64,000 bases of DNA from Dimorphilus gyrociliatus (lineage: Eukaryota; Animalia; Annelida). A program made the position numbers and the translations under genes. Below, piece by piece: positions 15,461 to 52,900 of the stretch. The number at the start of each line of letters is the position of its first letter. Positions within the stretch are counted from its first letter, which is position 1. The stretch is from positions 4,666,408 to 4,730,407 of the forward strand of contig CAJFCJ010000006.1 in NCBI GenBank assembly GCA_904063045.1. Direction: 5' to 3'. The notes below the pieces were generated by a model. It saw only the letters and a list, made by a program, of their open reading frames with translations. It searched no databases and was not told the origin of the DNA.

Positions 15461-18400
15461 CTAGAAACGATGACACTCGTCTTGGTTAATTGCTCCAGTT
15501 CTATCCGTTACCTCATCGATTGGGCAATGGTAACAGAAATTTGATCCATAGTTAGGTTGGTAACTTCCATCACTGCATGGATGACACAGATTCAATTCCT
15601 TAGAGTACCAACCGGGTTTGCAAGGCGAACAAGCTAAACCCTCTGTCTCATAAATCAATTCATAACCGTCTTCGCAAACGAAGAGGAAGTCATCTTGCTT
15701 CTCTTCATTTTTTGTCAATTGGAAAATTTTATTTTTCTCTAGGCTCTGCCTAAAATTGTCTGATGTTTTGAAATATTGATATAAATTAATCACATGTTTA
15801 TTCAGTTTGTTTTTTAGATCCTCGCGACAACTGCGGTCACATGCATCTGTTGTCTTATTTATGATTGATCTGTATCTATTTAAAGGTGCAAGTGTAAGAT
15901 TTACAATTAAAGTTTTCCCGAACGAGTTTAATTCCGAAAAAACATTTACGACTCTCTTGGAGCACTTTCCAAAGTCTTGAAAACGAACTCTTATGCATGC
16001 CTGCTCTCTCATAGAATCTAGAAAATTCCGCACACTATCCTGACTTGCATTCTTTTCCATTGACTTAAATTCGTAGATAATTAATATATTTGAAAGTGGT
16101 ATTGATATTACAAGTAACGTGATTGAAATTTGAGTATTTATTATTCTGTCCTTTCCCTCTATCTGTACTTGACATTTATAAACTCCAGTCATATGTTTCT
16201 TAGCTCTGTGAATAACTAAATTTCCATCCGAGTTTATTAGGGCTACTCCAGTTAAATCATCTAAGTTTAAATCCTCTTCGTAATTGAAAATTTGTAATCC
16301 ATCGGGAGATGTCCAAACATAATCATCTCCTTTTAACAACTCCCCTCTTAATTCAATACATCCAATTTTTGTGCTATCACCTAACCAAATGGTTTCTATT
16401 CTATTTCTTAGTTTGTTACAGTAATTACAACATTTTTTCCTGGCAAAATTATAACTTAATATACAGTCTCTGCTTAAATCTTTCGATTCGCAATCCTCCT
16501 TATCACCATAGCGACAGCTGTACGGTAGGCCACTAGATTCACTCTTTTTCAAACAAGTTAGACAGCAGGCTGAGAATATCTCCTTTGAGTAACATTTACT
16601 AAAGGGAACAGTCTTTTCGTTACACCCTTTTTCTAAATCCCCATACAGACATTTACGATCGCTATGTTCTTTTACATAAAAACCCTGAAGAGGGCAAGTT
16701 ACACTGCATTCTCTTTCCCTTGCTTTGCAATCTCTTAAGTTTGTAATATTTTTACATGATTTATCATCAGTCTTAACATGGTCTTTTACAAGATTTCTCC
16801 TCAATTTGTATGAATTTAATTCCAAAGAAGTTTTTTCCGCTGTGCTTTTTAATTTTGACAATTCAGAATCTGTTAGAGTTGTGTTATCCTCATTTATACA
16901 TTCCATTTTAGATTTGCTACCATTCTGATAAGTAATTTGATTGTTTGGACAAATGTAACAGAAATTCATTCCAATTTTGTCTTGATAAGAGTACATATCG
17001 CAAGGTTTACATTTTTTTGTAATGTTAGAGGAGTGATAGCCTAATTTACATGGTAAACATCCTCCCAAAACTTCTGAATATTCCATTCCTATTTCACAAT
17101 CTATTCTCTTCTTTTGATCAATGTACACATATAAATCAGTTCTATACGTTTCTTCTACTACTATTCCGAACTCGTCAATGTTCTTTAAAACGCATTCATA
17201 AATACCAGAATGATGCTTCTTGGCTGAATCAATTCTTAAAGTAGGAAAATGTTGTTGGAATAATGTGATTCTAGTTTCTCCATATCTAAAATACCAACGA
17301 TATCTCTTTTTTCTTGAAGTACTAGATTCTCCCCTACATCTTATAAGAACCAAATTACCCCTCCTGGTTATTATTTCCGTTCTATAACTGTAAGAATCAG
17401 CTTTACAAAGAGATTTTCTATCAGAACCCACTTTTACTGTAGTAGTGCCCTTTGGACATCTTATACAATCAGTAGAACCAATCTTGAACTGATAATAACC
17501 TTTCGGGCATCTTCTGCATCTATTTGTACTCTGATCGGGTTTAAATCGTCCCAGCAGGCAGGGGATACAATATTGCCCGTTAGTTTCATATCCACGATCA
17601 CAAGTTTTTGAGACAGTATAAGGCAAATCTATAACTGTACTTATCATATTCTCATAATGACCCTTCTTTCGTAAATAAATATCTCGTATTTCATTTAATA
17701 TTAAAAGATGCTTTCTTAAATTAGCTTTGGAATATTCATTATATCTATAAGTTATAAATATGGATACTACATAGTCGTATTTCAATTCGCTTAAGGAATC
17801 GTCTTCCTCTCTCTTACATGTTTGAGTAGTATTAAATAAACAATCAGATTTTATTGTCTTTTTTACTTGATAACATAATTCAGAATTTATTAATTTAGCG
17901 TAAAACTCATCATCGTACGATTGACAGAATTTGATTTTCCATTTCCATTCCTGATGAACTATCTTAACAATATTCACTTCAACAGCTAAGGCAATTCTAT
18001 AGGTGAGAACGTAACTCTGACCATCTATACGGCCATATCGATGACATTTGTAAACGTCGTTATGAGATTCGTCTACACTCTTTAAAAGCAAATATCCATC
18101 TTGAGAAATACTAGATCTAGTTTTATTTACTAATTGAGTAGGGTTTAAGGTTAACCATTCAACTCTTGTAGCAGACTGCTGAATAAAATTGTCGATTAAT
18201 TTACATTTCAGTTTAGCATTATACCCGTATTTAACGGTTGCTAGTTCGCTTCCTAAATCTTTCTCTCGAGTGCAATTTTTCCAAGAGTGCGATCCAACAG
18301 CAAGAGTTGTTGATCCTGTTGGACAATTGAAACAAATTACACTACCCAATTGATCGGTAAATGATCCAATTGGGCATTTTTTACATAATTCCATCCGATC

Positions 18401-19533
18401 GTTTGGCTTATAAAAACCAGGCAAACATTTACTACAGAACCGATCCAAGAAAACGTCTTGCGACTTATTTCTCAATAGTTGTAAGCATCTAATTGTTTTT
18501 AAACAATCTAAAATTATAAATAAGAATTTAAGTTTACGTAATATTTATCTAATTAATCAATTAATATACTTGGATTTAAGATATTCAGAGGTTCGTAGCC
18601 AGGGAGACAAAATCTCTTTAGACGTTTAATTGTATTTGATTTATAAAGATTTCTAAATTGTTTATCAATTTGTTTTGTGTACGTCTTTAGGTTTGATTTT
18701 AGTAGATTAGACCCTTTTTTATAGATTTTCTTAGCAGCTGATTCTGGACAGTTTGCGCATGAGCTTGAAATAAAACTCACTAACCAAATATCAAAATGAA
18801 ATTTTGCGCTATATCTTTTAATATATAAACCAACCGAATTATAATATTTTATAACATTCTTCTCCAATTCTGTTGATTTTTTGTCATCAATTATATCTTC
18901 CATTCTCATATTGTTCAATTCACAATCTACCCTGACCCTGATATTGAACGATTTCCTTATCTTTTCCTTTAAATCCCTAGAATATTCTTTTTGTAAAATA
19001 TTAGCTGTTTTTTGAAGTAATCTAAAATTAGTGCAACTTGAAACGTCAGAAATATAAGTTTCTGTTTGAATTACTGCTGCGTAATCAGAAATACTTAGAT
19101 AATGACTAAATTCATGAATTAATTTATCTTCTTTAATTAATAAACACTTATAGATTCCACTCCAACTAGTTTTTGCATAGCGTGTAATTTTTACTTTATG
19201 TTTGCTTTTAAAGTATATGTTTTTCTTTACGTCTTCTAGATTAGCTTCACTAATAAATCCGTCGTCTCTATAAAATTCTGGATATACTAAAACATAGTCA
19301 TATGACTCGATATCCTTAAATTTTGGCAGATGATCAGGTATGCAACTAAATGATTGCCTGTCTCTCATACTCCATCTTAGGGTAATTCTCTGCTCAGTAT
19401 CTCTATCTTCGCGCCTTTTGGAGATTAGTTCGCATGAATCGTAAGTATTAAAACCTTTACAATCTTCTTTAAGAGAATTCTCAACTATAGGATTTATTAC
19501 CAATAGGAGAAATTGAAGATAAGAGATAAGCAT
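15461..19533 (-). CDS. Secreted 1336-aa protein with four Ig + Cys-rich (GCC2/GCC3, ephrin-receptor-like) units and two PLAC/ShK-like Cys modules; ZPBP-like architecture
   Basis: complement(join(15461..18507,18570..19533)); one 62-nt phase-1 intron; 4011 nt in frame. Signal-like N-terminus MLISYLQFLLLVINPIVENS. Four Ig F-strand motifs (SGIYKC, NDVYKC, SGIYEC, TGVYKC), each followed by a C..GY...CxxC..G.(F/Y)...CxxC..G...CxxCP cluster. Two YGD...CC..C modules. No transmembrane segment. Confidence 0.85.
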
Positions 19534-20735: not shown

Positions 20736-23638
20736 CTAACTCTGCTCTAAAGTATTTTGTTTAAATAAAAATCCCTTCTTCATGCCAACGGGAGTTTCAA
20801 AAGGGGTTGTTGCATATTGAGATGGTGCTTCCACAGCATGTTGCTTTTTCAAGTCCATTGTTATTTTGGCTACAGCCTTTCCAATTCTTTCTGGTGAAGC
20901 TTGATCATCCAACAAGACAGACCAGTCCTCCAATGATACTGCTACAGGTAGATCAAATATTTTTGGTGAAATGTCGTATTTACCATCAGCTGCTCCACCT
21001 GTTTTTCTGATTGGTAACACTACTTTCTCACTCCAAACGAAATGGTCTATTTCCTTAGCTAACTCGGGACCGCCACCGATGAGAATACATATATCGAAAA
21101 CTCTTGAAGTTATAATCTCTCTCTCCTTGACGGAATCGCCTGAAAATACAGTATTGCCATATTCCACCATTTCAAATGTTCCATCTTCGTTTTGGTCGGC
21201 CACATCTGAATATTTGTAGTCGTCTTTTCTGGGAAGTATGTGCCATATATGCTTTTCATCATCCACCACGTCGTTCCTTTCATCGAATGCTGATCTAGCA
21301 ACAACATCCCCAACACCTTTGAATCCACCAGTTACAATATGAACGTTCTCCAAAGCTGCCAGATGTTGGCCTATAAGTCTAAAAAAAACCACAGAGTGAA
21401 TTGATTAACAGAATTGCACAATATCAGTGCAACTTACTTGCAGATATTTCTTGTCTCTTCATTGTTTATCAACTTGGAACCTGTGACGTACACGCTAAAT
21501 CCTGTAGGCATCAGTTTCTTTATTAAGTTGGAAGCGGTGGAAATTTTTTCCTCCTCCACATCATCCGCCCAACAAAACCTTGCACTTGTATGAAGGGCTT
21601 TTCTTATGTTATACTTGAGAGTTTCTTCAAAATTCTTTGTTCTAGCGTCAATAATTAGTCTGCTATTGATTAAACGATTAGTCCACGCAGGCATCTCAAA
21701 ATCGTCGCATATTATTGGTATGAGTCGTTTTCTATGCTCACAATAGTAAAGATGGCTTTTTGATATATTGGATGCTATAAACTCTTTCGATAATAGCAAA
21801 ATTATGCAACCTGCCTCGTTTGCTTTATCTTGAAAGATTGAACTGCGCTTTAAACTAGCTTCCGGAGTTGGTGAAAAAAATTCCGAGTTACGTAATTTTG
21901 GTGAGACATTTTCAGGGAGTGTTGGTTCATCGGCTAGGGATTCACAAGATGTTGAAAGCCAGACATCGACACAAACATCTTCTACTAACTTGGCTATTTT
22001 TTGTCCCTAGTCGTAAAAATGATAAATATAATGTTTTTCATAGATAATAGTGATAAACTGTATCTTATTTTATCAGTTAAGTGATTACTTACAAAAGAAT
22101 TTTTAGCAGGATGAAGACTTATTACAACTAAAGGATTTCCTTCTTTATTTCCCCTTACTTGATAACCTATATCAATGGGAAGTTTTGATGTTTTTGGATA
22201 GCTCTTTAACTTCGATGGTTGTCTTGCTAAAGATGTCTTAAGTTTCTTCGAATTGTCATTGTTCGAATCTCGAAGAAATTTTCCTATTTCATCGGCAACA
22301 AATTCAACATGTTCTGGATGCCATTTAGTATTTTCTATTGTATTTGCATTTTCTTGAGAGTTAGGCGAAAGAACTTCGCTATAGACGGATTGAGTATCAG
22401 CAGTTCCCTTAATATTTAAATCTGGACGATAGGTAACATACTGAGTTGAAGCGAACTGAATGGCTAACGGTTGGGGGGGCCAATGCGTTAAAAACGTAAC
22501 TGGAAGAATAGGTTTTCTTAGTACATCGGCTAGTTTAACCTCTCTATTGGTCCATTGCGTTTCACCGTAATTTTTCGTTATTAATGGAACAAATAATTGA
22601 CAATGAGTAACTGCATTGTTTAAAGAATCTTGCCAGTCAATTCCAGGCTTAATTTCATGAACATCTAGGTAGACTGTAACAAATTTTCGAATCAAAGCTG
22701 ATTTTAATAGGAGAGCGAATTCCGCAGCCTCTTGTCTAACATACGAAATAAGAATATCTTTGTAGTCATCACCAGCAGCCTGGATAGGAGGAGGAGGAGG
22801 AGGAGGGGGAGGAGGAAGAGGCCTTTTCTTAACTTCAGTAATTTTTACAACGGCTCCCTGAAGAACGTCTAGAACCACCAATTTAGCTTCGTGTTCTTTA
22901 ATTACAAGCCAATTGTTGGAATCTTTAAAGCGAAAATTTTCTGGTACTTTTAACTGAAAAACATGATAATCGATTCAGACAAAGGCTAAGAGGTTGTCGT
23001 AAACTTATCGAAAAATATATTATCTGTCTATACCTCCGTTTGAATGGCTGTTCTAAGTGCTGATAAACCGCAAGTGTGATCAATAAATATAAAACCGAAA
23101 TCATTATTTTTTACATCTTGTACACCAATTCGAGGTTTCTCAAAATTCTTCTGAATTTTTATTAAATTTCTTTCATCACAAATATCCGAGCAGGTAAATT
23201 GATTCTCGTCATCTTTTGTTATTGGATATCCATCTTTAGTTAAAAATATAAAACTGGCTGGTAAATAGCGTATAAGGACAACAATTTTTGTTCTGGCACA
23301 TGATAATGAGGAATCGGTTGGGAGTTTCATAACTCCCAATTTCCGTTTACATGATGATCCGCATGCTTCTGTTGTTAGTTCAATTGCATATATTTCAGTT
23401 CTACTAGGACGAGTTGTTGAACAGTCCTCATCTCCTGGGTAACATATATAAAACTATATAAATAGTTTTGGTAGTTACGAAATAAATGTAGAGGGTAATT
23501 ACCGTTCATGCTAGAGGAACATTGAGTTAGACAGACTTTCTTTGGAGAAGTCGATGGTGCTTCCGCCACAAGTTTTGTACGCTCTTTAAAAGTTCGCTTA
23601 AACCTGGTCGTCGCCTTTAGTGAATCGAAGCTTGTCAT
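20736..23638 (-). CDS. 869-aa protein: two ubiquitin-like folds, polyPro, TIR (catalytic Glu), degenerate TIR, and a C-terminal SLOG (LOG/Smf-DprA) domain
   Basis: complement(join(20736..21378,21438..22006,22093..22953,23034..23434,23503..23638)); introns of 59, 86, 80 and 68 nt; phases are consistent; 2610 nt. TIR: DILISY...VYLD...GIDW...FVPLITKNYGETQWTNRE...PILPV. SLOG: VYVTGS...IGQHLA...IVTGGFKGVG...KERE...ILIGGGPELAKE...VLPIRKTGGAA. Confidence 0.85.
22786..22818 (-). repeat. (CCT)n-rich repeat encoding a 10-residue polyproline linker
   Basis: GGA repeats on the + strand translate to LPPPPPPPPPPI between the Ubl region and the first TIR domain. Confidence 0.85.
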
Positions 23639-25240
23639 GTGTAGCTTTTTTTCTCTATCACACAAAGCGTGCTTGCCTATTAAAACCAAACTCTATTCGA
23701 ATTTATCAATGATAAAACGTGTTTGTTGAAAATTGATAAAACAATCACACTTTTTAAGACTAACCTGCTCGGAAAATCCAGATAGCTAATTCGGCAATTT
23801 TTTTCGAAGCTGATTGGCTATAAAATTAAATAGGCCAGCAGTTTCATAGGCGTATGTATGAGTCAAATCCGCCTTGACTTGTTATTCCATATATGGAATA
23901 ATTTTAAAGAAGTAATACTATAGGATAAATTAACTGATAAGAATATTATATTTTTTATAAAGAGAATATGATATATTTCTATAAATAAGTCATTACTAAT
24001 ATCAATCATGTTACAACCTTATCTTTACAAAGGGCAAATCATATAGCCCACTTTCTTGAAGAAGAACTGAAAATAGATCTGTACAAAACTTCCGTCTTTC
24101 TTTAATAAACGGAAGCGGATGTTCAAAAGAAACAAAATATTCTTTAGACAGTTTTTCAATAATTTCCCGATGTTCTGCATTGTATGCTCAGATTGCAAAA
24201 TAAATAAATGTTCTATAAAAGTAAATACAATGGATATTTATAAGTTATAAACAAGTGCTTTAATACACACCATACGAATGTATATATATATATATATTTC
24301 AAGTACTTTATATCAAATTCATGAATAAACAAAATATTTCATTAATTAACAAAATGATAAAACTATGAAAATTGTTTTTTCAATTATCATTGTAGGCTAG
24401 CTTAGCTTACTTGGCAGTTCTTTTTAAAATAAATATCAGTTACTAATCTTACCCCCAATAAATTCTTGGTAAGATTAAACACTGAACGGGAAAAATTGAA
24501 TTATGGGAGAGATATTGCTTACTCTACTCTTTTTTATCTCTTATATACTAATATACTGTATATACTGTATATATTATATACAGTATATCTATTATAAAAA
24601 TGTAATAAATCCATTAACACGATGACTGAGGATTATTAGTTATATATTTAACGAAACTAACATTGATTAGTTCTTCTCCAAAAGTTTTTTATATTCGTTA
24701 TTTAAGAGTTGAGGAACGACAGGGGTAACGTAATCCGGAAATAGGAAAAAGTTTGAATTATAGCATTAAGCTGTTTTGCATAAAAACATTATTGTATTTT
24801 CTTTCAAATTTCTGGTAATTCCTTTAGATTTGGAATGTTTTATTGCGCAATTAATTATACAGGAAGAAAGAAAACGAAAACATATTAGCATATTATTTAT
24901 GTAAAAAAAAAAACACTTTCAAGGTCAAAGCCAAGCAATAATAGGTATCAACGTAATTTTTCTATTCAGGTTAGGTGGAATAATAATCGGCCTTTGGCTC
25001 TTTAACTTAAGTTATGAAAGGGATTATCGACTTAGGTCGTCACCTCTTTATAACAGAGGATAAACACAACAAAAGAAGAATATTTGAGAACGAAAACTAT
25101 AATTTATTTATTTTTGAACTAGCTTAATAGGATATTACATACGAAATATAGCATAAACAGTATATATATTAGTATATAGAAGATAAGTATATGTATATAC
25201 TGGACATACTTAATAAAAGTAATTGATTATAACACAGTAA

Positions 25241-36359: not shown

Positions 36360-37261
36360 NNNNNNNNNNNNNNNNNNNNNNNNNNNNNNNNNNNNNNNNN
36401 NNNNNNNNNNNNNNNNNNNNNNNNNNNNNNNNNNNNNNNNNNNNNNNNNNNNNNNNNNNNNNNNNNNNNNNNNNNNNNNNNNNNNNNNNNNNNNNNNNNN
36501 NNNNNNNNNNNNNNNNNNNNNNNNNNNNNNNNNNNNNNNNNNNNNNNNNNNNNNNNNNNNNNNNNNNNNNNNNNNNNNNNNNNNNNNNNNNNNNNNNNNN
36601 NNNNNNNNNNNNNNNNNNNNNNNNNNNNNNNNNNNNNNNNNNNNNNNNNNNNNNNNNNNNNNNNNNNNNNNNNNNNNNNNNNNNNNNNNNNNNNNNNNNN
36701 NNNNNNNNNNNNNNNNNNNNNNNNNNNNNNNNNNNNNNNNNNNNNNNNNNNNNNNNNNNNNNNNNNNNNNNNNNNNNNNNNNNNNNNNNNNNNNNNNNNN
36801 NNNNNNNNNNNNNNNNNNNNNNNNNNNNNNNNNNNNNNNNNNNNNNNNNNNNNNNNNNNNNNNNNNNNNNNNNNNNNNNNNNNNNNNNNNNNNNNNNNNN
36901 NNNNNNNNNNNNNNNNNNNNNNNNNNNNNNNNNNNNNNNNNNNNNNNNNNNNNNNNNNNNNNNNNNNNNNNNNNNNNNNNNNNNNNNNNNNNNNNNNNNN
37001 NNNNNNNNNNNNNNNNNNNNNNNNNNNNNNNNNNNNNNNNNNNNNNNNNNNNNNNNNNNNNNNNNNNNNNNNNNNNNNNNNNNNNNNNNNNNNNNNNNNN
37101 NNNNNNNNNNNNNNNNNNNNNNNNNNNNNNNNNNNNNNNNNNNNNNNNNNNNNNNNNNNNNNNNNNNNNNNNNNNNNNNNNNNNNNNNNNNNNNNNNNNN
37201 NNNNNNNNNNNNNNNNNNNNNNNNNNNNNNNNNNNNNNNNNNNNNNNNNNNNNNNNNNNNN
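36360..37261. other. Assembly gap (902 N)
   Basis: Run of N characters. Confidence 1.
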
Positions 37262-37990
37262 CAAAAAGTAACATTCTAGACAATTTTTCTTTTATCTATA
37301 ACACTTTTATATTTATCAAAGCGGTTATATTTCTCAACGAAGAAGTAATAACTTAATATCATAATTTAATTTTTAAACGTTTAACTGAATACGACTACTT
37401 TTATTGTTGATCAAAGCTTAACTTTAGGTTTGGATACATCTATTTATATTTACTTTTCTTCAACTTGATGGCTTTTTTATAGCTTTCTGTACACTTTTTG
37501 ACTTGTTAGTTGTTTAACGGCTTTACTCGACATTTACTTTCCTTATTACTTCCTAACTTTGTAATAAAATAAATATTCTACTGTAATAAGAAAAGAAATA
37601 GTACTTCTTATTATGTAATAAATTAGGAAAGAATATCTTCTTCATATTCTCTTTAAATCAGCTAACTTTAGTCTCTTAAATAACTTTTGTCAGATTTTTT
37701 TTTCATTTTATATAACAACTTTTTCAACTGTATCTCGATCACAAAAAACTTTTTTCATCATATTTGTATATGTAATCCACTTTTCCAATATTATGAAATC
37801 TCTGAAAACAACTAGTATTAGTTTTTTGAATATCTTCTGAATATGCTCTTCTGTATAGAAAAAAAATCAACGTCATAGTGTAAACATTAAAATTTTATTT
37901 AGCCTCCAGTACTTTGTTAATAAATTTTGTTTGATTATATTAGTAATGTGTATACTTTCTTTTTGTATTCAAAGTTTTCTTCATTTTTAG

Positions 37991-40900
37991 TTCAACTTGA
38001 AAGATTTTGGTATGGAAAGCAAGATGTTCAACCTGCTGAGAATAACATTCTTAAAACTCATTCTTGGCGTGCTCATATGGTTTTATTACCAGATTATGAG
38101 ATACAAGAGAGTGGGTACATTTCTGAATGGAAATTTAAAGTATCTTGGTATGGAAATGTGTTCATTTCAATTTGGCGAGATGCTGGACAGGGTAAACTTC
38201 GATTCATCGGCCAAGTTCATAGATTGATAAGATCCAAGCAAGTTGGTTCCATTGTTACAATTAGTGGTGCAACTGAGAGATCATTTAAAGTGCAAAAAGG
38301 CGATCTTATCGCTATAGGACATTGGGGTTTAACAAAGCACAGTATAATACCTACAACTTTTGGAAAATGTACTAAAAATGTTAAGCTCATTCACACTGGT
38401 CTAACTTTAGCCTTTTTGAACTCGAGGACTACTTTATCCTTTAATCCAGTACCAGGGGATAATGGTTGCAGATCTTACGAATTAGGCATTCAAGTTGTGA
38501 GACCAAAGAATGCACATTGGGGAGAGCCTGTGGCTCGATGGGGCATATCTGCCCACAACTGGGTTACAAATTACCACAGTCATAATTTCGAAAGCTGTCT
38601 TGTTCTCTGTATGGTAGAAAATACTTTCGACTGTAAAGGCATTGACAATAGACTCGGAGACTGTCAATTGAACAACATTACTCTGCAAGAGGCTAAAGAT
38701 CTCGGTATGTGGTCTGGAAAGTGGAGGACGTATACATATCAAGAACTTATATATAAAGAAGGCCCTGTAGAGCCACCACCCCCTCCTGTGATAGAGGCAT
38801 GTGATAACACAGAGAGCCTAGGACCAATTGCAAAACTTCATCCAGCTGATACAACTATTAGCAGACAACTCCAGATTTATATTCTTTCACCTTTTAAATG
38901 TGTAGGATTGATAACGAAGTGGGAATTTTACGCTAAAGTTCCTGGCTTCGTTTACCTCTCAGTATGGAGAAAGCGAAATAATGTCTGGAAGCTTGTCAAA
39001 AGTAACAAAGTAGAAGCAACCTCTACCGGAAAACAAATAATTGAAATTGCAGAAGACGATCAAATAAGAGCAAAAGAAGGAGACGTTATCGGCTTTTATT
39101 ACGACAATGATCCAGATGCAACTGAAGGTGTAATAAGTTACGTTCAAAAGAGTGATGACAATATCAACTTATGCTGCGATCTAAAGCAGGAAGATTTGTA
39201 TCCTCTCCATACAGGAACAATTTTTGCCGATACAATCGAGAACTATGACGGATCCGACAATCCGGATCCAGTTATAACTCGTGCAGCAGCTATAAAGGCT
39301 CATCTGTTCCCCACAGCGGAATATTCTGGATTTTTTCCTCTAGATGAATGCCATACCAATGATGACGGTGATGTTACCGATGTAACAATCAATAATAATT
39401 TGGGAAAACCACAAAATATAGAATTTGTTGAAGGCTCAGACGGCAATAAATTTGGGGCTAGCTATTTTGATGGAAAGGCCGAAAACTTTATTGAAATCGA
39501 AGAAAGTCAGAGTTTAGATACTAAACTTGGAATAACAATCATGATTGATATCTATCCTGAAACTAGGACGGGAATTATCGCTAAATATAGCGAAGGACCA
39601 AATGGAGGAATTGAATTGATGATCAGATCAGGCAAAATATTCTTCCGCTTAGTTGAAAGGGGTAAAGAATATGGATCGAATGAATTTCTCATAAGCAAAT
39701 CAGTTATTACCCAAAAAACTTGGACCCATGTATCAGTAACTTACGAACCAGTTTCTAAAACGGGAACTATCTATATAAACGGAAAGAAAGACGCTACACA
39801 TACTTTTCAAACAGCAAGAGAGTTGGCTACTGAAGGAAACATTCGACTTGGCTCTTATCCAGGAGACAATAGATATTTTGCTGGTAGAATGTCTTGCCTT
39901 AGAATTTGGAGCTCAGCACTAAACGAAGAGGCAATCGAAAAAGAAAAGCAGTGTCGCATTCGTAAGATAAATAGACATAATATGTTTTTTATTATAGCAT
40001 TAACAGTTTTTTATTCTTTTACTTTTAGCCTATCCTCTCCTAGAGGAACATCCTTTAATTAAAGCAAAAATTGAAGATGCCGTTATTGTTAAAGACAATC
40101 TTACTTTACGTTGTGATTTTGTTCCGAAACCGGAGAAAGATAGTAGATATCAAATTGTATGGTACATGACAAATGACACAAAGATGGAGAAAATCCATTC
40201 TGAGTGGATTGATAATCTGGATCCATTGGTTGACAAAACAGCCACAGCCTTTTTAACAGCTGAAACTCACCTTAAATATCCTGAGCTTCTTTCTCAAGGG
40301 GTACAATGTAGAGTCTTTACTTGCTATAAAGACGAATGCGGCGGAGAAATTGAAAGCTGTGGAAAGAGGAGTAAAGTCCTTAAACCAGAGATTACCGTAA
40401 TCATTAGAATTTATTAATAAATAAGGTCTATAAAAAGCTTTAATCATTCCAAATAGATGACAACCAAAGGTCCATTCACTTTAGAAGAAGGTGGAGATAC
40501 ACAAACAATAGAATTTAAATGCTCACTCCCTCCCTCCGTTGTTTGTGATTTGGCCGAAGAATGTTCAATTAAGGTAAATTAAAGAAATCTACTATAAATA
40601 AAATGTTTTTGAACAAATAAAAAACATTCATAAATATTATAGATTGAATTTGAAATGACCGAGATTAATAAAGAACAAGTATGTCCATTCTCTAATGCTA
40701 TTTTGCCTCAAGTTGTCGTTGAAGAACCTCAATCGGAATTTTATACATCATGTGGAGTTATTGTAAATAATTTAAATTGGCATAAATCTTTAAGGTTCGT
40801 ATCAATGAATTAATAAAAGATATGCTGTATATATAATATTTAAAATTCATTTCTATTGCAGTCTTAAAATTAGAGCGACGATTGATAATATAATTGATAA

Positions 40901-43900: not shown

Positions 43901-46900
43901 CTCTTTAGATAAGAGAAAAGAAACTTTTATCAACATTCAACCCTGTTTATTTCGGATATGATAGATTCAGGAGTAGACGATTTGTCGGTTATTTGTCTTG
44001 TTTCCAAATACACAGGAGAAGCCTGGATGAGGCTGATGTCAAAAGATTAATGAAGTGTCCAGTTGGTAAGTGTATTTTTAAGAAATTGTAGAAACTTCTT
44101 TTTTAATAAAATAAAACATTTTGTTCTAGCTTTCCCTGTTTTAAAAGAGAGTCCAAAAGTTTCTGTTACTGCTGTAAATGTAACAAATGGCGACACAACT
44201 ACTCTTGAAAGAGCTCTACAATGCAGGTTTGTCTCCATCTTTAAGATGGTTGAATACAATAATAAAAACTATTTGAACATAAACATTATTAAAAATTTTT
44301 TAAAGCTTTCCTGCCGTTGAAAATGCTCAAGCTGATGTTCAATTTAAACTTGAATGGCAAATTGGTGGTCATACTGTCAAATCAGCAGCTTTAACCCAAT
44401 TGCAACAATCTACTGATGGTATTGAACACATTTTACTCTTTAGCGAAATGAAAAATCGCAAATTGACAAATGGAGTTGTTTGCACTGTTCAACCCTGTTA
44501 TGATGATAATTGTAATTGCAAAGCTCAATCGGAAACTTTTAAACCAATTGTTAAGGTAGGATTTTTTCAATAATTCATATTAAATGCTAACGTTATTCTT
44601 TGCTTGTAGGTCACAACAGAGGGTCCTATTAGTCTCTACGAGGGTAAAGAAAGTGCATTTTTAAAGATTGAAGCTAACTTACCTCCAACATATCTATGTT
44701 CTGACGAAGATTGCGTTGTTAAAATCGAAGCTTTTGTTGTTTCTAGGGGTAGGGAATACCGTTGTCCTAAACCACCAAGGAATTACTATCCTCAAGCTGT
44801 CGTTGGTTGGGGAGATTCTGATATACGATTCGCCCATTGCGGTATTACCATTACGGAAGATTCGTTTGATAATTTACCATCTATACCTATCAGAGCAACA
44901 GCAGATAGAATAATAGATAGATTAGCTATCAGAAGTTTAAAAATTTATAGACGCCACTATGTAAAGAAATTGGTTGTTTGGGAAACTCTAATAAAAACAA
45001 TTGAACTTAAAATTTACAATACCGACCATTTTGCCCAATGTAAGAGTTTTAATGATCCGCATATTACAACATTTGATGGAAGGTAAAGTACTGATTAACT
45101 TAAAAAATAATAAATATTTAACAATCTCATAACATTTGTAGAAAATATGACAACCATTACGAAGGTGAATTTATTCTATATAAACACAAAACTCTACCTT
45201 ATGCCGTAAGTTTGTTAAATCTATTGAATGTTAATATTCTTTAAAATATTAAATCTTATTTTGAACTAAAAGGTTCACGCCTTCTATCGAAAATGCTCTA
45301 CAAATCCTAAGTCATATGTAACTTGTAATTGCGCCGTTGCCGTTAGATCCGGTGATGACGTTATCGTCTTTGACCGTTGTGGCGCTAAACGTGACAAGAG
45401 TAATAAGAATATCGAAATTAAATTTTACAAAAATGGGCCATTGACAACTGGAACAAGGATAATAAGTCAGCATGGTGGAAAAAAATATCAAGTAATACTG
45501 CCAACTGGAACTGTTATAAATGTACTAACCAGCTTTAGCAAATTTGTAAACATTTTAATCGTTGCTTCCTCTGATGATTACGATAATACTCAAGGTCTCT
45601 GTGGTACTTATAATAATGAGAGAAGTGATGATTTTACAAAGAGAGATGGCTCTCTTCTTACTACTACTTCAAGGAAACCCAATGTTTTCTCAGTATCATG
45701 GAGGTAAGATAGCTAACGTTTTAAATTTACTGATCTAATATCATATCTTTCCCTCAATAGAGTAACAAAAGAAGAATCAATTTACTATGGTTTATGCGCT
45801 GATAAATTGACACCTGCAGATAAAATAATACCTAAAATATATTGTCATTGCCAAGAGGGTAGGAAGACAAAAGATCAGAGTTGCGGTTTCAGCTATGATA
45901 CCAGTCTTTGTACACCACTAGGTAAACGTCTTCAATTGTCAATTATTTCCTTTTTAATTTAATAAATATTGTGCTTAGGCAAAGATATATCGGGAAGCTT
46001 GAAAGTCTTCAAATCAAAGTGTGTTATTGAAGCGGAAGATGAATTTGAATTTGATCCTGAGGAACCTAAAGATAACAAATGGGAAGATGGAGGTTTGACT
46101 GAAAAAGAGGCTAGAGACGCTTGTACTCAACGTCTAGAGAATTCTCAAGTCCATAAAATTTGCTTCCCGAAATTTTTATTTAAGAGCGAAAAAACTGATT
46201 TAATTACTGATTGCATTAATGACGTTCAGGCTGCAGGAGACGATCAATGGGCAGGAGCAATAGTAGAAGCTGCCAAAGAAATTTGTGAACAAAGAACTGA
46301 AACTGATACAGATAAATGGGATGGAAAAGATGATCCTCCACCAAATATTGTAGAGAATTTGTGCTTGAACGAATGCTCTGGAAATGGAGTTTGCAAAAAT
46401 AGTATTTGTAAATGCGAAGCTGATTTCACAGGTGCTGATTGTTCTGAAGAGGTCGGTAAACCTCCAAAAATTACTTCCGAATATGTTCATTGCGATCTCT
46501 CCAAATCGGATTGCTCGAGTATTGTTATTGAAGGGGAAGAATTTGTTGATTCTGATACTTTAGCCTGTAAATTTATTGAAGTTACTGTTAGAAAGGGTTT
46601 AAAATGGATTCTAACGAGAAAAATTCAGACTAGTGCTGCTACTTTAATAGTTGAAGGAAAAGTTCAATGCGTGGTTCCCGATAAGAGTAAACATTATGTA
46701 GTTACAGTAACAAATGATGGTGAAAAATTTGCAACTAAACTCATAATCGTCATCATTTTCAACTCGATATGTACTGATTGTAATAAAGAGACTGGATGGT
46801 GCAGCCAGAAACCTTCCGGTGGTTGCCTGATCTTGAATAAATGTTATGGGCCAGGTGTACGAAATCCAAAAGATGACAGACTAGAATGTCAACCTACAAC

Positions 46901-49900
46901 TAGCAGCTCATCCTGGACTGTCATAGGAAGTAAGTTTTTTTTTACTAAACATTTATAATATATTTTCACGGAATAATTGTAATTACTACTTTTCAGCCGA
47001 ATTACCTATCGCAATTTATGCCTTGGATGACTGCTCTCTAGCCAAAGACTCGGCTAGAGGAAGATCCGACGGAGAGGTTATCGGAGATTATATGATTACT
47101 GATGGACCAGGAGGACGAGCAGATGGAGCCATTAGCTTCAGAGGATCAACTCGCAGCTATATTAAAATTGAAAAGAAAGAAGTTTTAAATACGAAATATT
47201 CAATTTCTGTATTCATGCACGTTTATTTCGATCTTCTAAATCAAAAAGCATCTCTCTTCTCCTTTGGGGAAGAAGGACGAGTATCTTTCTTCATACAAAA
47301 TAGAAATCTTGTATTCTTAGCAAAAATGAAAGATGACACCCTCTTCGATAACAGCGTAGCCTATAGATTACCTAATAACTTGGCTGGTAAATGGATACAT
47401 GTTGGAGCATCATATGATTATTCTAAAAGTACATTGGCTCTCTACGTAAACAGAAATAGAGTTAAATTCGAAGAAGTTTCTCTTCGCGAACCAGTTACAA
47501 ATGAAGATATTTACATAAATCATGTGACTACTGGCAAATTTAGCGGACTTAAAGGAAAACTCTCCTGTCTAAAAGTTTATGATAGAGTATTGAAATCGGA
47601 TGAACTTGAAAGTGCAAGCGAATGTCAAACTCGTAAGTGATTAAATTACAATGCATATCTTCTTGTCTAATTTAAATATATTAAATAGTTGCTCCATCGC
47701 TAAAATCACCACCAAAACTTATTGGTATACAACATACAACAATCGTCAGGAAGGTGATAAAGAAAAACTTTGCCGAGAAGAGAATAATTACAAGAGTTGT
47801 TGTCGAAGGAGGCGTAAATAAGACTACAACAGAAGAAACTTGGAACAATTATACAAAAACAATTGAAACAAACGAAACAACCCAAACTAAAGCGTTTGCT
47901 TACGCATGTCAAATCAATTTATTACAATCTGAAAAGATCATAAGTTACGCATTCTCGTGGTTATACAAAGGTATAGAAGTTGGTATGTCGAATTACTTAA
48001 ACGTAAAGAAAGAATTTAACATCTATAATGGTGTCATACCTGATTCATTGATGAACTCTATTGCATCACCTGAATTGGTAAATATTTCTTCTAGTGTTTA
48101 AATCTTATATTTAATTTGTTGACTTTTATTCAGTTGTCTTGCCAAGTTGCAACATGCGAAGAAGGCGATTGTGAGAAAAAGTGCGTAAAGAAGAGTAATC
48201 CTTTTAAGAATTCACTTGAAGTACTTACAAAAGAGATAACGGTTGTTGAAGGAGGACATGTTGGCTTTATTGCAATTAGAAGTCCAGTTCCACCTTCAGT
48301 TATTTGCGCACCAAACGATACTTCCACTTGTAGTATAAGAATAACAGTTCGCATTAAGGAACACAACACTGACTATAAATGCTATGATAAAACGAAAATT
48401 CCCCAATTTGTTGTTGGATGGAAACAAGATGATGACACAACATCTTCAGAGGCTTTTTGCGGTATTGAACTACCTCATTCAAGATGGGATGATATTTTGA
48501 AAATACCAATTAAAGCCAAGTTAGATAGAATCAATGAAAAGGGAAAAACCGTTATAAGATATGCCGAAATTGTTCAAACTGTTTACATTCAAGGTGTTGC
48601 CATAAGAGAATCTGTCGTTATTGGAGAAGTAACAGTGAAAGTCGTTGATATGGATAGGCCATCTATGTGCATGAGTTATGGTGATCCTCACTTCAAAACA
48701 TTTGACAATCAGTGAGTTTTTCAATTTTTATCTATTCCAGATAATTAATATAACTATTCTATCTTGAATTTTTCATTTAGGAAATACAACTTGTACCGTG
48801 AAGGTGAATTCGTCTTGTATCGACACAAAACTCAACCTATTCAAGTAAACGTCTTACTTAAAGCTTGCGCTTATTGGGGTGTAAGTACTGCAACATGCAT
48901 TTGTGTCGTAGCCGTTAAAATCCAAGATGACGTTATACTTATTGATACATGCGGAGGTTTGAATGGTAATAAAGTTAAAAAGGAATCTTCAGAGATAAGC
49001 GCTTATTTAAATGGAAATCTTACCAAGAGCGTTAAAATCCAGCAGTTTTCTAATAATTATAGAATTCTTTTACCTACTGGTACCGTCTTGAGAACTGAAG
49101 TTTGGAAACATGATGGTTATATGTTCATGAACGCTTATATAGAATCTAGCCCCTACGATTGGGAAATGACAGAAGGTCTCTGCGGTTTCTACAATGGTAA
49201 ACGTGTTGGTGAATTAATTGGTAGCGACGAAATCATCTACAAGAATAATTACCTACCTAATAAGTTCATTTCTACTTGGCTCGTTACCGAAACACTCTTC
49301 GGAGGATACTGTCCACCAGTTGTTGAAGAGTCAAACACAACTGATGTAAATAAAACTGAAGAGGAACACTTTTTCTGCGATTGTATTTCAGGTCAAGAAA
49401 AATGTGGATCAGGCTTACTTAAGAGAGAATGTCCTCTTAATAAAATTGAAAGTAAATGGCAGGATGTTACCCAGTTTGTAGTGGACGATGCTGAACAAAC
49501 CGAATGTGAAAATCCTGATAACAAACCAGAGATTATTATAATAACAACTCCTGACCCTGTAGAAAAGACATGGCCTGTTAAAAATATCACCAAGGAGAAG
49601 GCAAGAGAAATTTGTCGACAGTCATTAACCATTATTGCGTGCGGAAAGGAAATTGATAAAGAGGCACTAGATAGAGATATCGAAAGTTGCATGGCAGATA
49701 TTTTATTATCAGAATCACTGAAATTTATTGGAGCTACAGTAGAGGCAGCAAAGACACGTTGCGAAATTGATGAAGGTAATAAACCAGAGCCAGATCCTGA
49801 TGTTACTGGCAAACTTTGCCCAAGTAACTGTAATGGGCGCGGTGATTGTAACGAGGGTATATGCGAATGCAAAGACAAGTACACTGGAGACGATTGTTCT

Positions 49901-52900
49901 ATCGAAAAAGGTAAAAAACCCAGATGTTCGAGAGCAGTTTGTTCTGGATTCTTGTGTAAATTCTTCACTATCTGGGGATGGGGATTCCAGAGAACAACCT
50001 CCCTTTCATGTCATTTCCAAAAATGGACTATCACTAAAGGTTCTGTCACGGTTGTTGGAAACTCAATAAAAACTTCAGCTACATATATTAGCGGTAGCAG
50101 AATCCGTTGTACTCTACCAGCAGATGATGCAGACTACACTATTTCGGTTAGTAATGATGGAGGAGATTCTTGTGAGGATCCACCAATTACTCCCAAGTTA
50201 AAATGTCATCGCTGCTATTACAATAAGCAAGGAAAATTAGAATGTAAAATAAGAAGAAATACTTGTTATATTGGTCAAAAATGCTTCTCAGCTAGTCAAC
50301 TAAATCCAGAAAATAACTTACAAATCTGCCGTCCAGGACAGGATCCTTATGGATGGACAACCATAAGTACTGTAAATTACAATGTTTGGTTTCCATTCGA
50401 TTCGTGCCGTCGTATGCATGACGTTCAGAGGACATACGAAGTCGAAGGGGACGGAACATTCGTCAAATGGGGAAATTCTCAAGCTCTTTCATTTATGAAT
50501 AAAAGAAGATTAATCAGACATGATAGCGATTTCAGCCCAGTGACTAGTTTCTCTATCACTACTTCTGTTCTAATCGAGAATAGAATCAGGAGACACACTA
50601 ACCTAATTAGATATTCAAGAACTTCAGCAAGAACTCAAATCACTCTAACAGCAACAACAAGACATTCAATCATATTTAGAGTTATGAATAAATATGTGTC
50701 AACCAAAAACAATATTATCGAAATAGGCAAATGGGCACATATTCAAGCATCGTATGATTATGATACTGGTAAATTGACTGTAAAGGTCACGAAAGAAAAC
50801 ACTGAAACTTTCGAAAAGGATACATCTTTGAAACTTATCAACATCGATTCGAATAGAATTTTCTTGGGTGAAAAATTAAGAGGATCAATGGCTTGTGTTG
50901 GATTCAAATCATCCCTCGATATTGAAGATGAATTTAAAGACTGTAGAGAGTCCAGCTACTTCAAAATTGCAAATAAACGAGTTTCTGAAGCTTCCGTCAT
51001 GTATAAAGAAAGTTTTGACGGAAATTTCGTTTTCAATTATAAATTTAAAGCTCTACAAGACGCAAATGTTGAATATAGATTCAAATGGTACAGTGGTGAA
51101 GATGTTTATGAACAAATGAACTTTACAGTGGCAAATGGTGGAGACTACCAAAATGGTACTCTTCTTATACCTTATGAAAAAGCATCTATTGTACAAAAAG
51201 GGGTAATTTATATCTTTTAGCAATTTTCAAATTGTTATTCACTAATGTTTCTCTTATTGCAGTTGCACTACGCGGTTACATCTTGTCTAACTAAGGATTG
51301 TACACCTGAAAATTCATGCCCAGGTTACAGTAATATGTTTGTACCAGGCATCCATGTAAGTTATCTTGATAGATTTGGTCATTTATGTAAGAGGTAATAT
51401 TAAATTATGCGTAAAATTAAGGTTACAACGGACAAGGAAATAACAATAGTTGAAGGAGGTGCAGAGGTTTACATCAAAGTCATCTCTAATGCCCCACCCA
51501 ACTTGATTTGCAGAGGACCTCCACCACCTAAAAGTAAAATATTGCACAGATGTTTTATCTAATTTTATCAAAATTTATATAAATATTTCCATTCAATAGA
51601 GGATTGTCGTTTGATTGAAGTTAAAACTCCGCACGAAACTATGATATTGAGACCAAACGGAGAGAAATGCAATGATAGACCAAGTTATATTCATATTGGT
51701 GATGATTTAGATACATATCTAGGTTTCGATGGAGAGAGATGGAATATTGGTAATTCTGTTTGCAGCGATGATGTTGCTAAAGGCATTAAGGCTGATCAAC
51801 CTTATTTCAAAGGTTCTAATGATACTGGATTCTGGCCTCCTGGCTTCCATGTTAAATGCATAGGTATATTTTCAAAATTAAAATGACCTGTTTTCGTGAT
51901 AAATAGATAACGCTAAATTACTCTTTCTTATAGAATCTTGTCAAAATATACAAATTGTTGGCACTGGAGAAACGGATGGTGCTTATGAAAAAACATTAGA
52001 AAATTGTGACAGTAGACCTGTTTACAAATCGAAGAATGATTTAGATCCTGAAAAAGAACATTTCCTATTCTCCTTTGATGGAAAGTGGGGAATTGCTAAA
52101 GAAAAATGTACAGCCGATTTCCTAGTAACAGGACCAGAAAGAGAATGGCCTGATGATAAAGCAGAAATAAGTTGGCCCGAAAATGTTGAACTGAAATGCC
52201 TCGGTTTGTAGTATTATGAATAATTTTTAATAGTTTGTCATCATACTATTCGTCTTTTAGCTTACAAATATAAGGAAGAGGGAGAACAACAAGAATATTC
52301 AAAGTGCTACGTTAAAATCGTGACTATTATTGAAACTGTCAATAGAGATTTTAAATGTAAAGATAAATCACTTATACCGCAAGCTGTTATTGGAGTTCCA
52401 CCACCAATAGGAGAATTGAAACAATATTGCGGTGTTTTCATTACAGAATTCAACTGGAATTCAGTAAGTAAAACTCTTTTAAAGCTAAAAATAGAATGTT
52501 TTACCTCTCGACTCTTTACAGCCAATTAGTATACCAGTGAAGGCCAAGATTGACGGAAAATTTGAAAGGAAAACTAAAATAAGGAAATTGTTCATTAAGG
52601 AAACTCACATTGTGAATGAAGTTGTAGTTTACAAAAGAGTAGTTGAAGAGATAACGCTAAATATTAAGGATCCCTATTCTGATTGGAAAGGACATATTTG
52701 TAAATCAGTTAATGATCCTCATATGACAACATTTGATAAAACTCGTTATGAAATGCATTTGAAGGGCGAATTTGTCCTCTATAAACACAAGAACTTATCA
52801 TATGCTATTCATGCCATATACACACCTTGCAATAGAAATAGACCTGGAGGTGTTTCATGTAATTGTGGAGTTGTAGTAAGAGCGGGTGATGATGTTGTTT

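What the first reader, a model, noticed from the sequence alone, without database searches (positions are those of the whole stretch)
20736..22760. Animal single-chain TIR + SLOG protein: Thoeris-like signal-maker and sensor domains in one gene
Seen: one spliced 869-aa ORF contains a TIR domain with the catalytic Glu in its usual place (QWTNRE, codon 22540-22542). It also has a C-terminal Rossmann-type SLOG domain (VTGS, TGGxxGVG, ER, GGGPxxxxE, PxxxTGGAA). Known: in type I Thoeris, the ThsB TIR makes an ADPR-derived cyclic signal from NAD+ and the ThsA SLOG domain binds it. TIR-associated SLOG families occur in prokaryotic nucleotide-signalling systems. In animals, SLOG is mainly known from the TRPM N-terminus, and TIR NADase activity from SARM1. 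Inference: this may be an uncharacterised animal NAD+-signalling or innate-immune module, in which the TIR makes a nucleotide that the SLOG senses or processes, with autoregulation possible in cis. The ordinary short introns show it is an integrated host gene and not bacterial contamination.
Basis: partly seen in the sequence, partly recalled or inferred. Interest (0 to 1): 0.85.

Follow-up and report, generated by a model that had tools for sequence, protein, structure and literature searches.

The report
Animal TIR–SLOG gene, already catalogued
This is a real, expressed gene of the small marine worm Dimorphilus gyrociliatus that joins an NAD+-cleaving TIR enzyme domain to a SLOG nucleotide-binding domain; the family occurs from sponges to sea stars, and a 2026 preprint showed that the sea-star copy's TIR makes cyclic ADP-ribose, so the idea is sound but not new.

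Summary
A five-exon, 869-aa gene on the minus strand (23638..20736) is supported intron by intron by 100%-identical spliced transcript contigs. It is identical to the GenBank protein DgyrCDS5383 of the annelid Dimorphilus gyrociliatus.

The order is tandem ubiquitin-like domains, a poly-proline linker, TIR1, TIR2, then SLOG.
- TIR1 carries the catalytic Glu317 (codon 22542-22540), which aligns with SARM1 E642.
- TIR2 is degenerate, with His551 where the Glu should be (Gln in 148 of 164 relatives).

The gene belongs to a vertically inherited family found in many animal phyla. Across these, TIR1 is about 67% identical and the Glu is kept in 163 of 164 members.

A 2026 bioRxiv preprint already lists TIR+SLOG animal proteins. 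It shows that the Patiria miniata orthologue's TIR (65% identical) makes cADPR. So this is a new member of a known kind.

What the SLOG binds or does is untested. No separate effector domain is present, and the recorded product is canonical cADPR, not ThsA's ligand 3'cADPR. The Thoeris analogy is therefore partial.

The scan noted other TIR/SLOG pairings elsewhere in this genome. I did not test those.

The parts
20736..23638 (-). Whole coding region of the 869-aa gene. Five exons: 23638-23503, 23434-23034, 22953-22093, 22006-21438, 21378-20736.
   Evidence: Hand model. All four introns confirmed by spliced contigs. Identical to P0271, DgyrCDS5383.
23693..23764 (-). Intron in the 5'UTR. The transcript continues upstream to at least 23800.
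   Evidence: Joint 23692/23765 in an X2 contig. The spliced leader has an in-frame stop before the ATG at 23638.
22825..23399 (-). Two tandem ubiquitin-like (beta-grasp) domains, aa ~58-222, spanning intron 23033-22954.
22779..22824 (-). (CCT)n repeat encoding a poly-proline linker between UBL2 and TIR1.
   Evidence: Sequence. It is the only place where the transcript contigs break.
22426..22764 (-). TIR1, the catalytic-type TIR domain, aa 243-355.
   Evidence: Pfam TIR_2 77.1 bits. PADLOC ThsB1 5.5e-09. Best solved relatives by sequence are SARM1 TIR chains. Mean 67% identity across phyla.
22540..22542 (-). GAG codon of Glu317, the predicted catalytic glutamate in QWTNRE.
   Evidence: Aligns with SARM1 HKE, E642. 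Glu in 163 of 164 family members. Corresponds to E327 of the assayed Patiria TIR.
21605..22134 (-). TIR2, a degenerate second TIR, aa ~453-600, spanning intron 22092-22007. His551 (codon 21754-21752) sits at the catalytic position.
   Evidence: Pfam TIR_2 25.0 bits, below the cut-off. Profile-profile TIR1 against TIR2 gives E 1.9e-4 and puts His/Gln opposite the Glu. Gln in 148 of 164. The preprint tables list His or Gln for the second TIR of family members.
20841..21502 (-). SLOG domain, aa 635-835, spanning intron 21437-21379. Conserved pocket residues are G642-S643 (21481-21476), TGGFKGVG (aa 672-679), H702, R742 (21122-21120) and E765 (21053-21051).

Best explanation
**What it is.** This is the Dimorphilus gyrociliatus orthologue of a vertically inherited protein found in many animal phyla. 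The domain order is UBL-UBL, proline-rich linker, TIR1, pseudo-TIR2, SLOG.

**Shown**
- The gene is spliced and expressed as one transcript.
- TIR1 is a catalytic-type TIR with the glutamate in place.
- The C-terminal domain has the SLOG fold, and its nucleotide-pocket loops are conserved.
- The TIR1 of the sea-star orthologue makes cyclic ADP-ribose from NAD+ in E. coli.

**Inferred**
- TIR1 of this protein cleaves NAD+ and releases cADPR. Glu317 acts as the catalytic residue.
- TIR2 has lost the Glu. It probably serves as a non-catalytic partner or scaffold for assembly of the TIR active site.
- The SLOG binds an ADP-ribose-type nucleotide and gates the protein's assembly and TIR1 activity allosterically. 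The ligand could be the TIR's own product (feed-forward) or a metabolite such as ADPR, NAD+ or NMN. ThsA's SLOG, TRPM2's MHR1/2 and SARM1's ARM domain act in this way.
- The tandem UBLs are a protein-protein interface to downstream partners.

The confidence figure blends near-certainty about identity and architecture (~0.95) with about 0.4 for the SLOG-as-sensor mechanism.
For: - **Transcript and model:**
- **Identity with DgyrCDS5383:**
- **TIR1:** TIR_2 77.1 bits. ThsB1 5.5e-09. SARM1 alignment places Glu317 opposite E642.
- **Orthologue assay:** TIR1 is 65% identical to the Patiria TIR recorded as active and making cADPR (preprint 10.64898/2026.04.20.719644, Table S4 row 129).
- **Conservation:** Glu in 163 of 164 members and TIR1 at a mean 67% identity across the sampled phyla.
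- **Pocket register:** the VIA alignment starts at model residue 17 against chain residue 283. If beta1 aligns without gaps, G642-S643 fall on ThsA G289-S290, which bind the ligand's diphosphate.
- **Pocket conservation, of 164:** G642 161, G674 162, G677 161, H702 161, R742 153, G758 161, E765 145.
- **Inheritance:** the gene tree follows phyla, which indicates vertical descent.
Against: - No ligand binding or enzyme activity has been measured for this protein or for any SLOG of the family.
- The orthologue's TIR was assayed alone, over-expressed in E. coli, and needed 4 h of induction. The table row records only canonical cADPR. No 2' or 3' isomer, NAD+ depletion or ThsE activation is entered.
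- ThsA's SLOG prefers 3'cADPR, so the pairing of product and sensor is not established.
- There is no effector domain, so the output of any signalling is unknown.
- Dimorphilus departs from the family consensus in the SLOG loop (GGGPELAKE against EGGPGAAHE). It also has the longest branch in the tree.
- Apart from G642-S643, residue-level correspondence with ThsA's pocket could not be checked.
Confidence: 0.6

Rival explanations
1. The SLOG is an enzyme, not a sensor. It would be a LOG/PpnN-like N-glycosidase or phosphoribohydrolase that processes the TIR1 product, or another nucleotide, into a second signal or inactivates it. The protein would then be a two-step nucleotide-processing enzyme.
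For: - The family keeps an Arg (R742, 153 of 164) and a Glu at the end of a GG-P-G-x-x-x-E loop (E765, 145 of 164). These sit in the same order as the Arg/Glu pair and PGGxGTxxE motif of LOG enzymes; the LOG motif is from my own knowledge.
- Aravind and colleagues propose that SLOG domains act both as sensors of ADPr derivatives and as specialists cleaving 1'-ribosyl N-glycosidic bonds (PMC9503650).
Against: - ThsA keeps the equivalent Arg and Glu (R371, E403) purely for ligand binding. The motif therefore does not discriminate between the two readings.
- The Pfam matches are to LDcluster4 and STALD, not to LOG families.
- No activity data exist.
Confidence: 0.2
2. The protein is mainly a non-enzymatic TIR adaptor or scaffold in a Toll/IL-1-type pathway. 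The cADPR seen with the orthologue would be a by-product of over-expression, and the SLOG and UBLs would serve only as interaction modules.
For: - Most animal TIR proteins studied so far act as adaptors.
- The orthologue's activity needed 4 h of induction in E. coli and was seen with the isolated domain only.
- The preprint's authors themselves call their conclusions speculative at this stage.
Against: - Glu317 is kept in 163 of 164 members, and TIR1 is 67% identical on average between Dimorphilus and the 44 orthologues from other phyla. That is far more conserved than the rest of the protein and points to an enzymatic constraint.
- TIR1 is of the TIR_2/SARM1/ThsB type, not the TLR/MyD88 type: PF01582 scores only 15.7 bits.
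- The SLOG nucleotide-pocket glycines are near-invariant.
Confidence: 0.1
3. The gene model is an artefact. On this reading, separate TIR and SLOG genes were wrongly joined, or the DNA is bacterial contamination.
For: None was found. The only gap in transcript coverage is the 46-nt poly-Pro repeat, where the tool skips repeats.
Against: - One contig runs from the SLOG exon through TIR2 into TIR1, past the Glu codon, across two GT-AG introns.
- At least 163 relatives from many animal phyla have the same architecture.
- The flanking genes are typical animal genes.
Confidence: 0.01

Closest known systems
Patiria miniata LOC119739902 (UniProt A0A914B4U3, 857 aa), the TIR-SLOG protein assayed in bioRxiv 10.64898/2026.04.20.719644
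   Same: It is the orthologue, with the same UBL-UBL-TIR-TIR-SLOG order. Identity is 37% over 805 residues, and 65% in TIR1 with the Glu aligned. LDcluster4 and STALD hit its C-terminus.
   Different: It comes from a different phylum. Only its isolated TIR1 was tested. Dimorphilus has His rather than Gln in TIR2, a diverged SLOG loop, a 45-aa non-conserved N-terminal extension and a long branch.
Type I Thoeris (ThsB TIR + ThsA SIR2-SLOG) of bacteria
   Different: Here it is one polypeptide, not two genes. There is no SIR2 or other effector. The orthologue's recorded product is canonical cADPR, not 3'cADPR. The SLOG matches Pfam LDcluster4 better than STALD. It is a vertically inherited animal gene, not a defence-island operon.
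SARM1 (ARM-SAM-SAM-TIR NADase of animals)
   Same: SARM1 TIR chains are the closest solved TIRs by sequence, with the catalytic Glu aligned. The logic is also similar: a catalytic TIR governed by a nucleotide-binding regulatory domain in the same chain (discussion of NMN and the ARM domain).
   Different: There are no ARM or SAM domains. The regulatory candidate is a SLOG at the C-terminus. A second, inactive TIR and N-terminal UBLs are present.
TRPM2 and other TRPM channels (N-terminal MHR1/2, a SLOG that binds ADPR)
   Different: There is no channel or transmembrane part. The match is weaker than to ThsA, TM1055 or PpnN. Pfam assigns a different SLOG family.
Tandem ubiquitin-like modules (USP7 HUBL, ISG15, OASL C-terminal di-UBL)
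   Same: The N-terminal ~165 residues model as two beta-grasp domains. Their best matches are these proteins.

Membership tests
Catalytic TIR domains (TIR_2; SARM1/ThsB-like NADases) | Sequence match to the TIR profile above the curated cut-off | tested here: met
   PF13676 TIR_2 scores 77.1 bits against a cut-off of 28. PADLOC ThsB1 gives 5.5e-09.
Catalytic TIR domains (TIR_2; SARM1/ThsB-like NADases) | Catalytic glutamate at the conserved position | tested here: met
   Glu317 in WTNRE aligns with SARM1 WVHKE, E642. It is Glu in 163 of 164 relatives.
Catalytic TIR domains (TIR_2; SARM1/ThsB-like NADases) | NAD+ cleavage or cyclic-ADPR production | not testable with these tools
   Shown only for the Patiria orthologue's TIR, which is 65% identical. 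Source: preprint Table S4 row 129.
SLOG superfamily (Pfam LDcluster4, PF18306) | Profile match at or above the gathering score | tested here: met
   29.1 bits against 26.3 for the spliced domain aa 620-869. The whole protein scores 25.1 bits, just under the cut-off. 25 of 32 orthologue domains match.
SLOG superfamily (Pfam LDcluster4, PF18306) | Rossmann-like SLOG fold | tested here: met
SLOG superfamily (Pfam LDcluster4, PF18306) | Glycine-rich nucleotide loops plus a conserved Arg and Glu | tested here: met
   VYVTGS, TGGFKGVG, R742, GGGP....E765 and TGGAA are present and near-invariant in the family.
SLOG superfamily (Pfam LDcluster4, PF18306) | Binding or processing of a nucleotide ligand | not testable with these tools
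   No data exist for any member of this animal family.
Type I Thoeris system | SLOG fused to an effector (SIR2, or a TM/macro variant) | tested here: not met
   Pfam finds only TIR_2 and LDcluster4. No SIR2, macro or other effector is present.
Type I Thoeris system | SLOG of the STALD (Sir2- and TIR-associating) family | tested here: inconclusive
   Dimorphilus has no STALD hit. 19 of 32 orthologue domains hit STALD at E up to 0.01 (best 2.2e-06). In the full-length scans STALD scored below its cut-off of 24 bits and always below LDcluster4. In structure, ThsA ties with TM1055.
Type I Thoeris system | TIR product is 3'cADPR, sensed by the SLOG | not testable with these tools
   The orthologue's row records cADPR only. 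ThsA selects 3'cADPR.
SARM1 family | ARM-SAM-SAM-TIR architecture | tested here: not met
   No ARM or SAM hits. The N-terminus is a tandem UBL.
TRPM channels | SLOG (MHR1/2) followed by a six-TM channel | tested here: not met
   The protein ends 34 residues after the SLOG. No channel domain is present.

The most novel reading that the evidence does not exclude
The SLOG of this family may be a dedicated receptor for the cyclic ADP-ribose made by TIR1 of the same or a neighbouring chain. Ligand binding would then drive self-assembly through the TIR1/pseudo-TIR2 pair. The result would be an effector-less, feed-forward 'single-chain Thoeris' whose output is either NAD+ collapse or UBL-mediated signalling. 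It would be an ancient animal cADPR sensor, possibly lost in some lineages: no vertebrate, insect or nematode appears among the named hits seen, but absence was not tested.
Probability: 0.25. Interest if true: 0.8.

Novelty: new member of a known kind. Interest (0 to 1): 0.5.

Why it matters
**Why it matters.** TIR enzymes that make cyclic ADPR signals are central to bacterial and plant immunity. In animals the receptors for such signals are essentially unknown. This family puts a proven cADPR-making type of TIR and a ThsA-like nucleotide pocket into one conserved chain, in species from sponges to echinoderms. That makes it a direct, testable route to learning how animals read TIR-made nucleotides.

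**What this work adds beyond the preprint's catalogue**
- A transcript-verified gene model in a compact-genome annelid.
- Recognition of the tandem UBL and pseudo-TIR parts.
- The breadth and vertical descent of the family.
- Strong conservation of the SLOG pocket.

**Limit on novelty.** The central observation, an animal TIR+SLOG protein with a catalytic TIR, is already public.

Tried and rejected
- **Sequence search of solved structures.** Searching PDB sequences with the SLOG exon gave nothing. The 32-sequence SLOG profile gave only noise, plus sub-threshold TM1055 and TRPM2 hits. The fold comparison was needed.
- **PADLOC.** It has no match for the SLOG exon.
- **Single-exon Pfam scans.** These under-scored the SLOG (20.6 bits), because the domain starts in exon D.
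- **ESM Atlas.** A feature search on the N-terminus gave no usable lead; best score 0.77.
- **Bacterial ancestry.** I looked for a bacterial TIR+SLOG operon ancestor. The closest stand-alone LDcluster4 proteins sampled (P0268, P0117) sit next to DUF5619 and unannotated genes, not TIRs. Two loci are too few to exclude one.
- **Papers not held.** Burroughs et al. 2015 (PMC4678834), which defined the SLOG families, and the 2020 J Bacteriol review (PMC7685563) are not in the library. I could not check whether they already mention animal TIR-SLOG fusions. A PMC id I recalled from memory was wrong.
- **Preprint entry for this gene.** Table S3 of the preprint lists a Dimorphilus protein, A0A7I8VJV4, with a Glu TIR and a His TIR. 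That pattern fits this gene, but the gene's 869-aa isoform is UniProt A0A7I8VJR0, and I could not confirm the link.
- **Low-GC bin.** The low-GC bin at 36-38 kb is an assembly gap of N, not a feature.
- **Contamination and mis-joining.** Both were rejected.
Full report
**1. Is it there?**

Yes. On the minus strand I read five exons: 23638-23503, 23434-23034, 22953-22093, 22006-21438 and 21378-20736. All are bounded by GT-AG, and together they give 2610 nt, 869 codons plus stop.

Contigs of a public run (X2) are 100% identical to the window. They skip exactly these four introns, and also a 72-nt intron in the 5'UTR at 23693-23764. One 1896-nt contig runs from the SLOG exon through exon D into the TIR1 exon, past the Glu codon. 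The refutation test 'TIR and SLOG exons are in separate transcripts' therefore fails. The only break between contigs is the (CCT)n poly-proline repeat at 22779-22824, which the tool skips as a repeat. The spliced leader carries an in-frame stop before the ATG at 23638.

The joined protein is letter-for-letter identical to P0271, DgyrCDS5383 of the annelid Dimorphilus gyrociliatus (CAD5116506.1, UniProt A0A7I8VJR0). A second annotated form, DgyrCDS5384 (789 aa), starts at Met81 and would truncate the first N-terminal domain.

Neighbouring ORFs are ordinary animal genes: Ephrin-receptor-like/Ig, PP2C, cNMP-binding, Fuseless, LamG, VWD/EGF and VWA.

**2. What are the parts?**

*TIR1 (aa 243-355).*
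- Pfam TIR_2 scores 77.1 bits against a cut-off of 28. The PADLOC ThsB1 profile gives 5.5e-09.
- The closest solved sequences are SARM1 TIR chains. The alignment puts Glu317 of QWTNRE opposite E642 of SARM1's WVHKE.

- It scores 25.0 bits on TIR_2, below the cut-off.
- A profile-profile comparison of the family's TIR1 and TIR2 blocks gives E 1.9e-4. It places His551 (codon 21754-21752) opposite the catalytic Glu.
- Across 164 full-length relatives this position is Gln in 148. TIR2 is most likely non-catalytic.

*SLOG (aa 635-835).*
- It starts in exon D, which is why the single-exon scan under-scored it (20.6 bits).
- The spliced domain scores 29.1 bits on LDcluster4 against a cut-off of 26.3. 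25 of 32 orthologue domains match LDcluster4, and 19 of 32 match STALD, ThsA's family, at E up to 0.01; in the full-length scans STALD scored below its 24-bit cut-off.
- An AlphaFold model built on a 32-sequence alignment has mean pLDDT 90.7.
- Foldseek's best hit is 7uxs_A, the Bacillus cereus ThsA SLOG bound to 3'cADPR, at E 3.1e-07. TM1055, TRPM channels, PpnN, LOG and Moco-carrier proteins follow.

*N-terminus (aa ~58-222).*
- It has no Pfam hit. The family alignment shows a repeated F-x-F-L..G-W-P...Q-E motif.
- I modelled the Liolophura orthologue, because Dimorphilus's region cannot be given as one reference. The model (pLDDT 85.4) has two beta-grasp units.

**3. How widely does it occur?**

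A search of 1.84 billion representative proteins with the SLOG exon found 322 hits. Most of the strong ones are proteins of 750-1050 aa with the match at the C-terminus. Named relatives with the same TIR_2 + LDcluster4 pattern come from these groups:
- nemerteans, molluscs, annelids and a priapulid;
- chelicerates;
- echinoderms and hemichordates;
- Trichoplax;
- homoscleromorph sponges.

The preprint's Table S2 adds a flatworm and tardigrades.

I saw no vertebrate, insect, nematode or cnidarian among the 120 hits listed. With 101 further hits unlisted, absence is not shown.

A maximum-likelihood tree of 45 members follows phyla: Ambulacraria, echinoderm classes, chelicerates, gastropod groups and sponges each hold together. 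This is the quick tree; the careful search did not finish. The pattern fits vertical descent from an early animal ancestor. Dimorphilus has the longest branch (1.6 against a median of 0.43).

Conservation is very uneven. Mean identity to Dimorphilus by region is:

| Region | Mean identity |
|---|---|
| TIR1 | 67% |
| SLOG | 43% |
| TIR2 | 32% |
| UBLs | 28% |
| Linkers | under 25% |

Among 164 full-length members, the residue counts are as follows:

| Residue | Conserved in (of 164) |
|---|---|
| Glu317 | 163 |
| G642 | 161 |
| G674 | 162 |
| G677 | 161 |
| H702 | 161 |
| R742 | 153 |
| G758 | 161 |
| E765 | 145 |

**4. What is already known?**

- It tabulates animal proteins with a Glu TIR, a His/Gln TIR and a SLOG (Table S2).
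- It lists SLOG among the domain abbreviations of Fig. 3A.
- Table S4 row 129 records the TIR of Patiria miniata A0A914B4U3 (857 aa, TIR 254-417, E327) as active, making cADPR after 4 h.
- The text states that activity of the animal TIRs depended on the catalytic glutamate.

A0A914B4U3 is P0272, an isoform of the Patiria orthologue. It is 37% identical to the Dimorphilus protein over 805 residues. In TIR1 it is 65% identical (71 of 109), with E327 opposite Glu317.

That Patiria is the SLOG-bearing protein drawn in Fig. 3A is my inference. It is the only family member I found in Table S4, and the text names one echinoderm. The preprint's main text does not discuss what the SLOG does.

I could not read Burroughs et al. 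2015, which defined the SLOG families.

**5. How does it most likely work?**

*Shown:* one transcript; a catalytic-type TIR1; a SLOG fold with a conserved pocket; and an orthologue's TIR1 that makes cADPR.

*Inferred:*
- TIR1 cleaves NAD+ and releases cADPR.
- TIR2 is an inactive partner. TIR NADase sites form between TIR molecules, so a built-in pseudo-TIR could template or restrain assembly.
- The SLOG binds an ADP-ribose-type nucleotide and controls assembly or activity.
- The UBLs link to partners.

One residue-level clue supports ligand binding. The fold alignment starts at model residue 17 against ThsA residue 283. If the first strand aligns without gaps, G642-S643 fall on ThsA G289-S290, which hold the diphosphate of 3'cADPR. 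R742 and E765 follow in the same order as ThsA R371 and E403, but I could not verify that register.

The main rival is that the SLOG is a LOG-like hydrolase acting on the TIR product. The same Arg and Glu fit both readings.

**6.

The parts list and the enzymology are right. The 'Thoeris in one chain' picture holds only in part, for three reasons:
- there is no effector domain;
- the recorded product is canonical cADPR, whereas ThsA selects 3'cADPR;
- the two bacterial loci I examined with the closest stand-alone SLOGs have no TIR neighbour.

**7. Verdict**

It is a new (annelid) member of a family whose architecture and TIR activity are already public, so it is not a discovery. What remains open, and interesting, is the role of the SLOG. 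I score interest at 0.5.

Earlier notes of this scan flag TRPM (SLOG) genes next to dual-TIR genes elsewhere in the same genome. I did not test them.

Noticed in passing
window 23399-22825 (aa ~58-222 of the gene): The N-terminus of the TIR-SLOG protein is a pair of ubiquitin-like domains with no Pfam family. A repeated F-x-F-L..G-W-P...Q-E motif is conserved across phyla. The closest folds are USP7 HUBL, ISG15 and the OASL di-UBL.
   Followed up: partly
window 20960-21247, 22374-22689, 23193-23345: A 2024 'coral metagenome' metatranscriptome run (X1) holds three short contigs about 99% identical to exons of this gene. A Dimorphilus-like worm was probably present in that coral sample.
   Followed up: no
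window about 36361-37260: A run of N (assembly gap) explains the 14.5% GC bin and the spurious long ORFs listed there on both strands.
   Followed up: yes
window 23638 vs Met81 (about 23330): GenBank carries two protein records for this gene: DgyrCDS5383 (869 aa) and DgyrCDS5384 (789 aa, starting at Met81). The shorter one would cut into the first UBL domain. The transcript contigs support the longer 5' structure.
   Followed up: partly
window 15461-18475 (-), 37927-40062 (+), 45969-51220 (+), 58886-60217 (+): The window is rich in long exons for secreted or adhesion-type proteins: Ephrin-receptor-like repeats + Ig, LamG/pentraxin-like, VWD + teneurin-type EGF, and tandem VWA. There is no obvious functional link to the TIR-SLOG gene.
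   Followed up: no
L001 4682-5624 and L002 4558-5500 (bacterial metagenome contigs): A stand-alone bacterial LDcluster4 SLOG gene sits directly downstream of a DUF5619 gene on two contigs from different samples that carry the same set of neighbouring genes. This may be a conserved two-gene unit of unknown function.
   Followed up: no
family alignment, P0190 (Littorina saxatilis): This is the only one of 164 family members without the catalytic Glu (it has Lys instead), yet all its SLOG pocket residues are intact. It could be a sequencing or annotation error, or a natural catalytic-dead variant.
   Followed up: no
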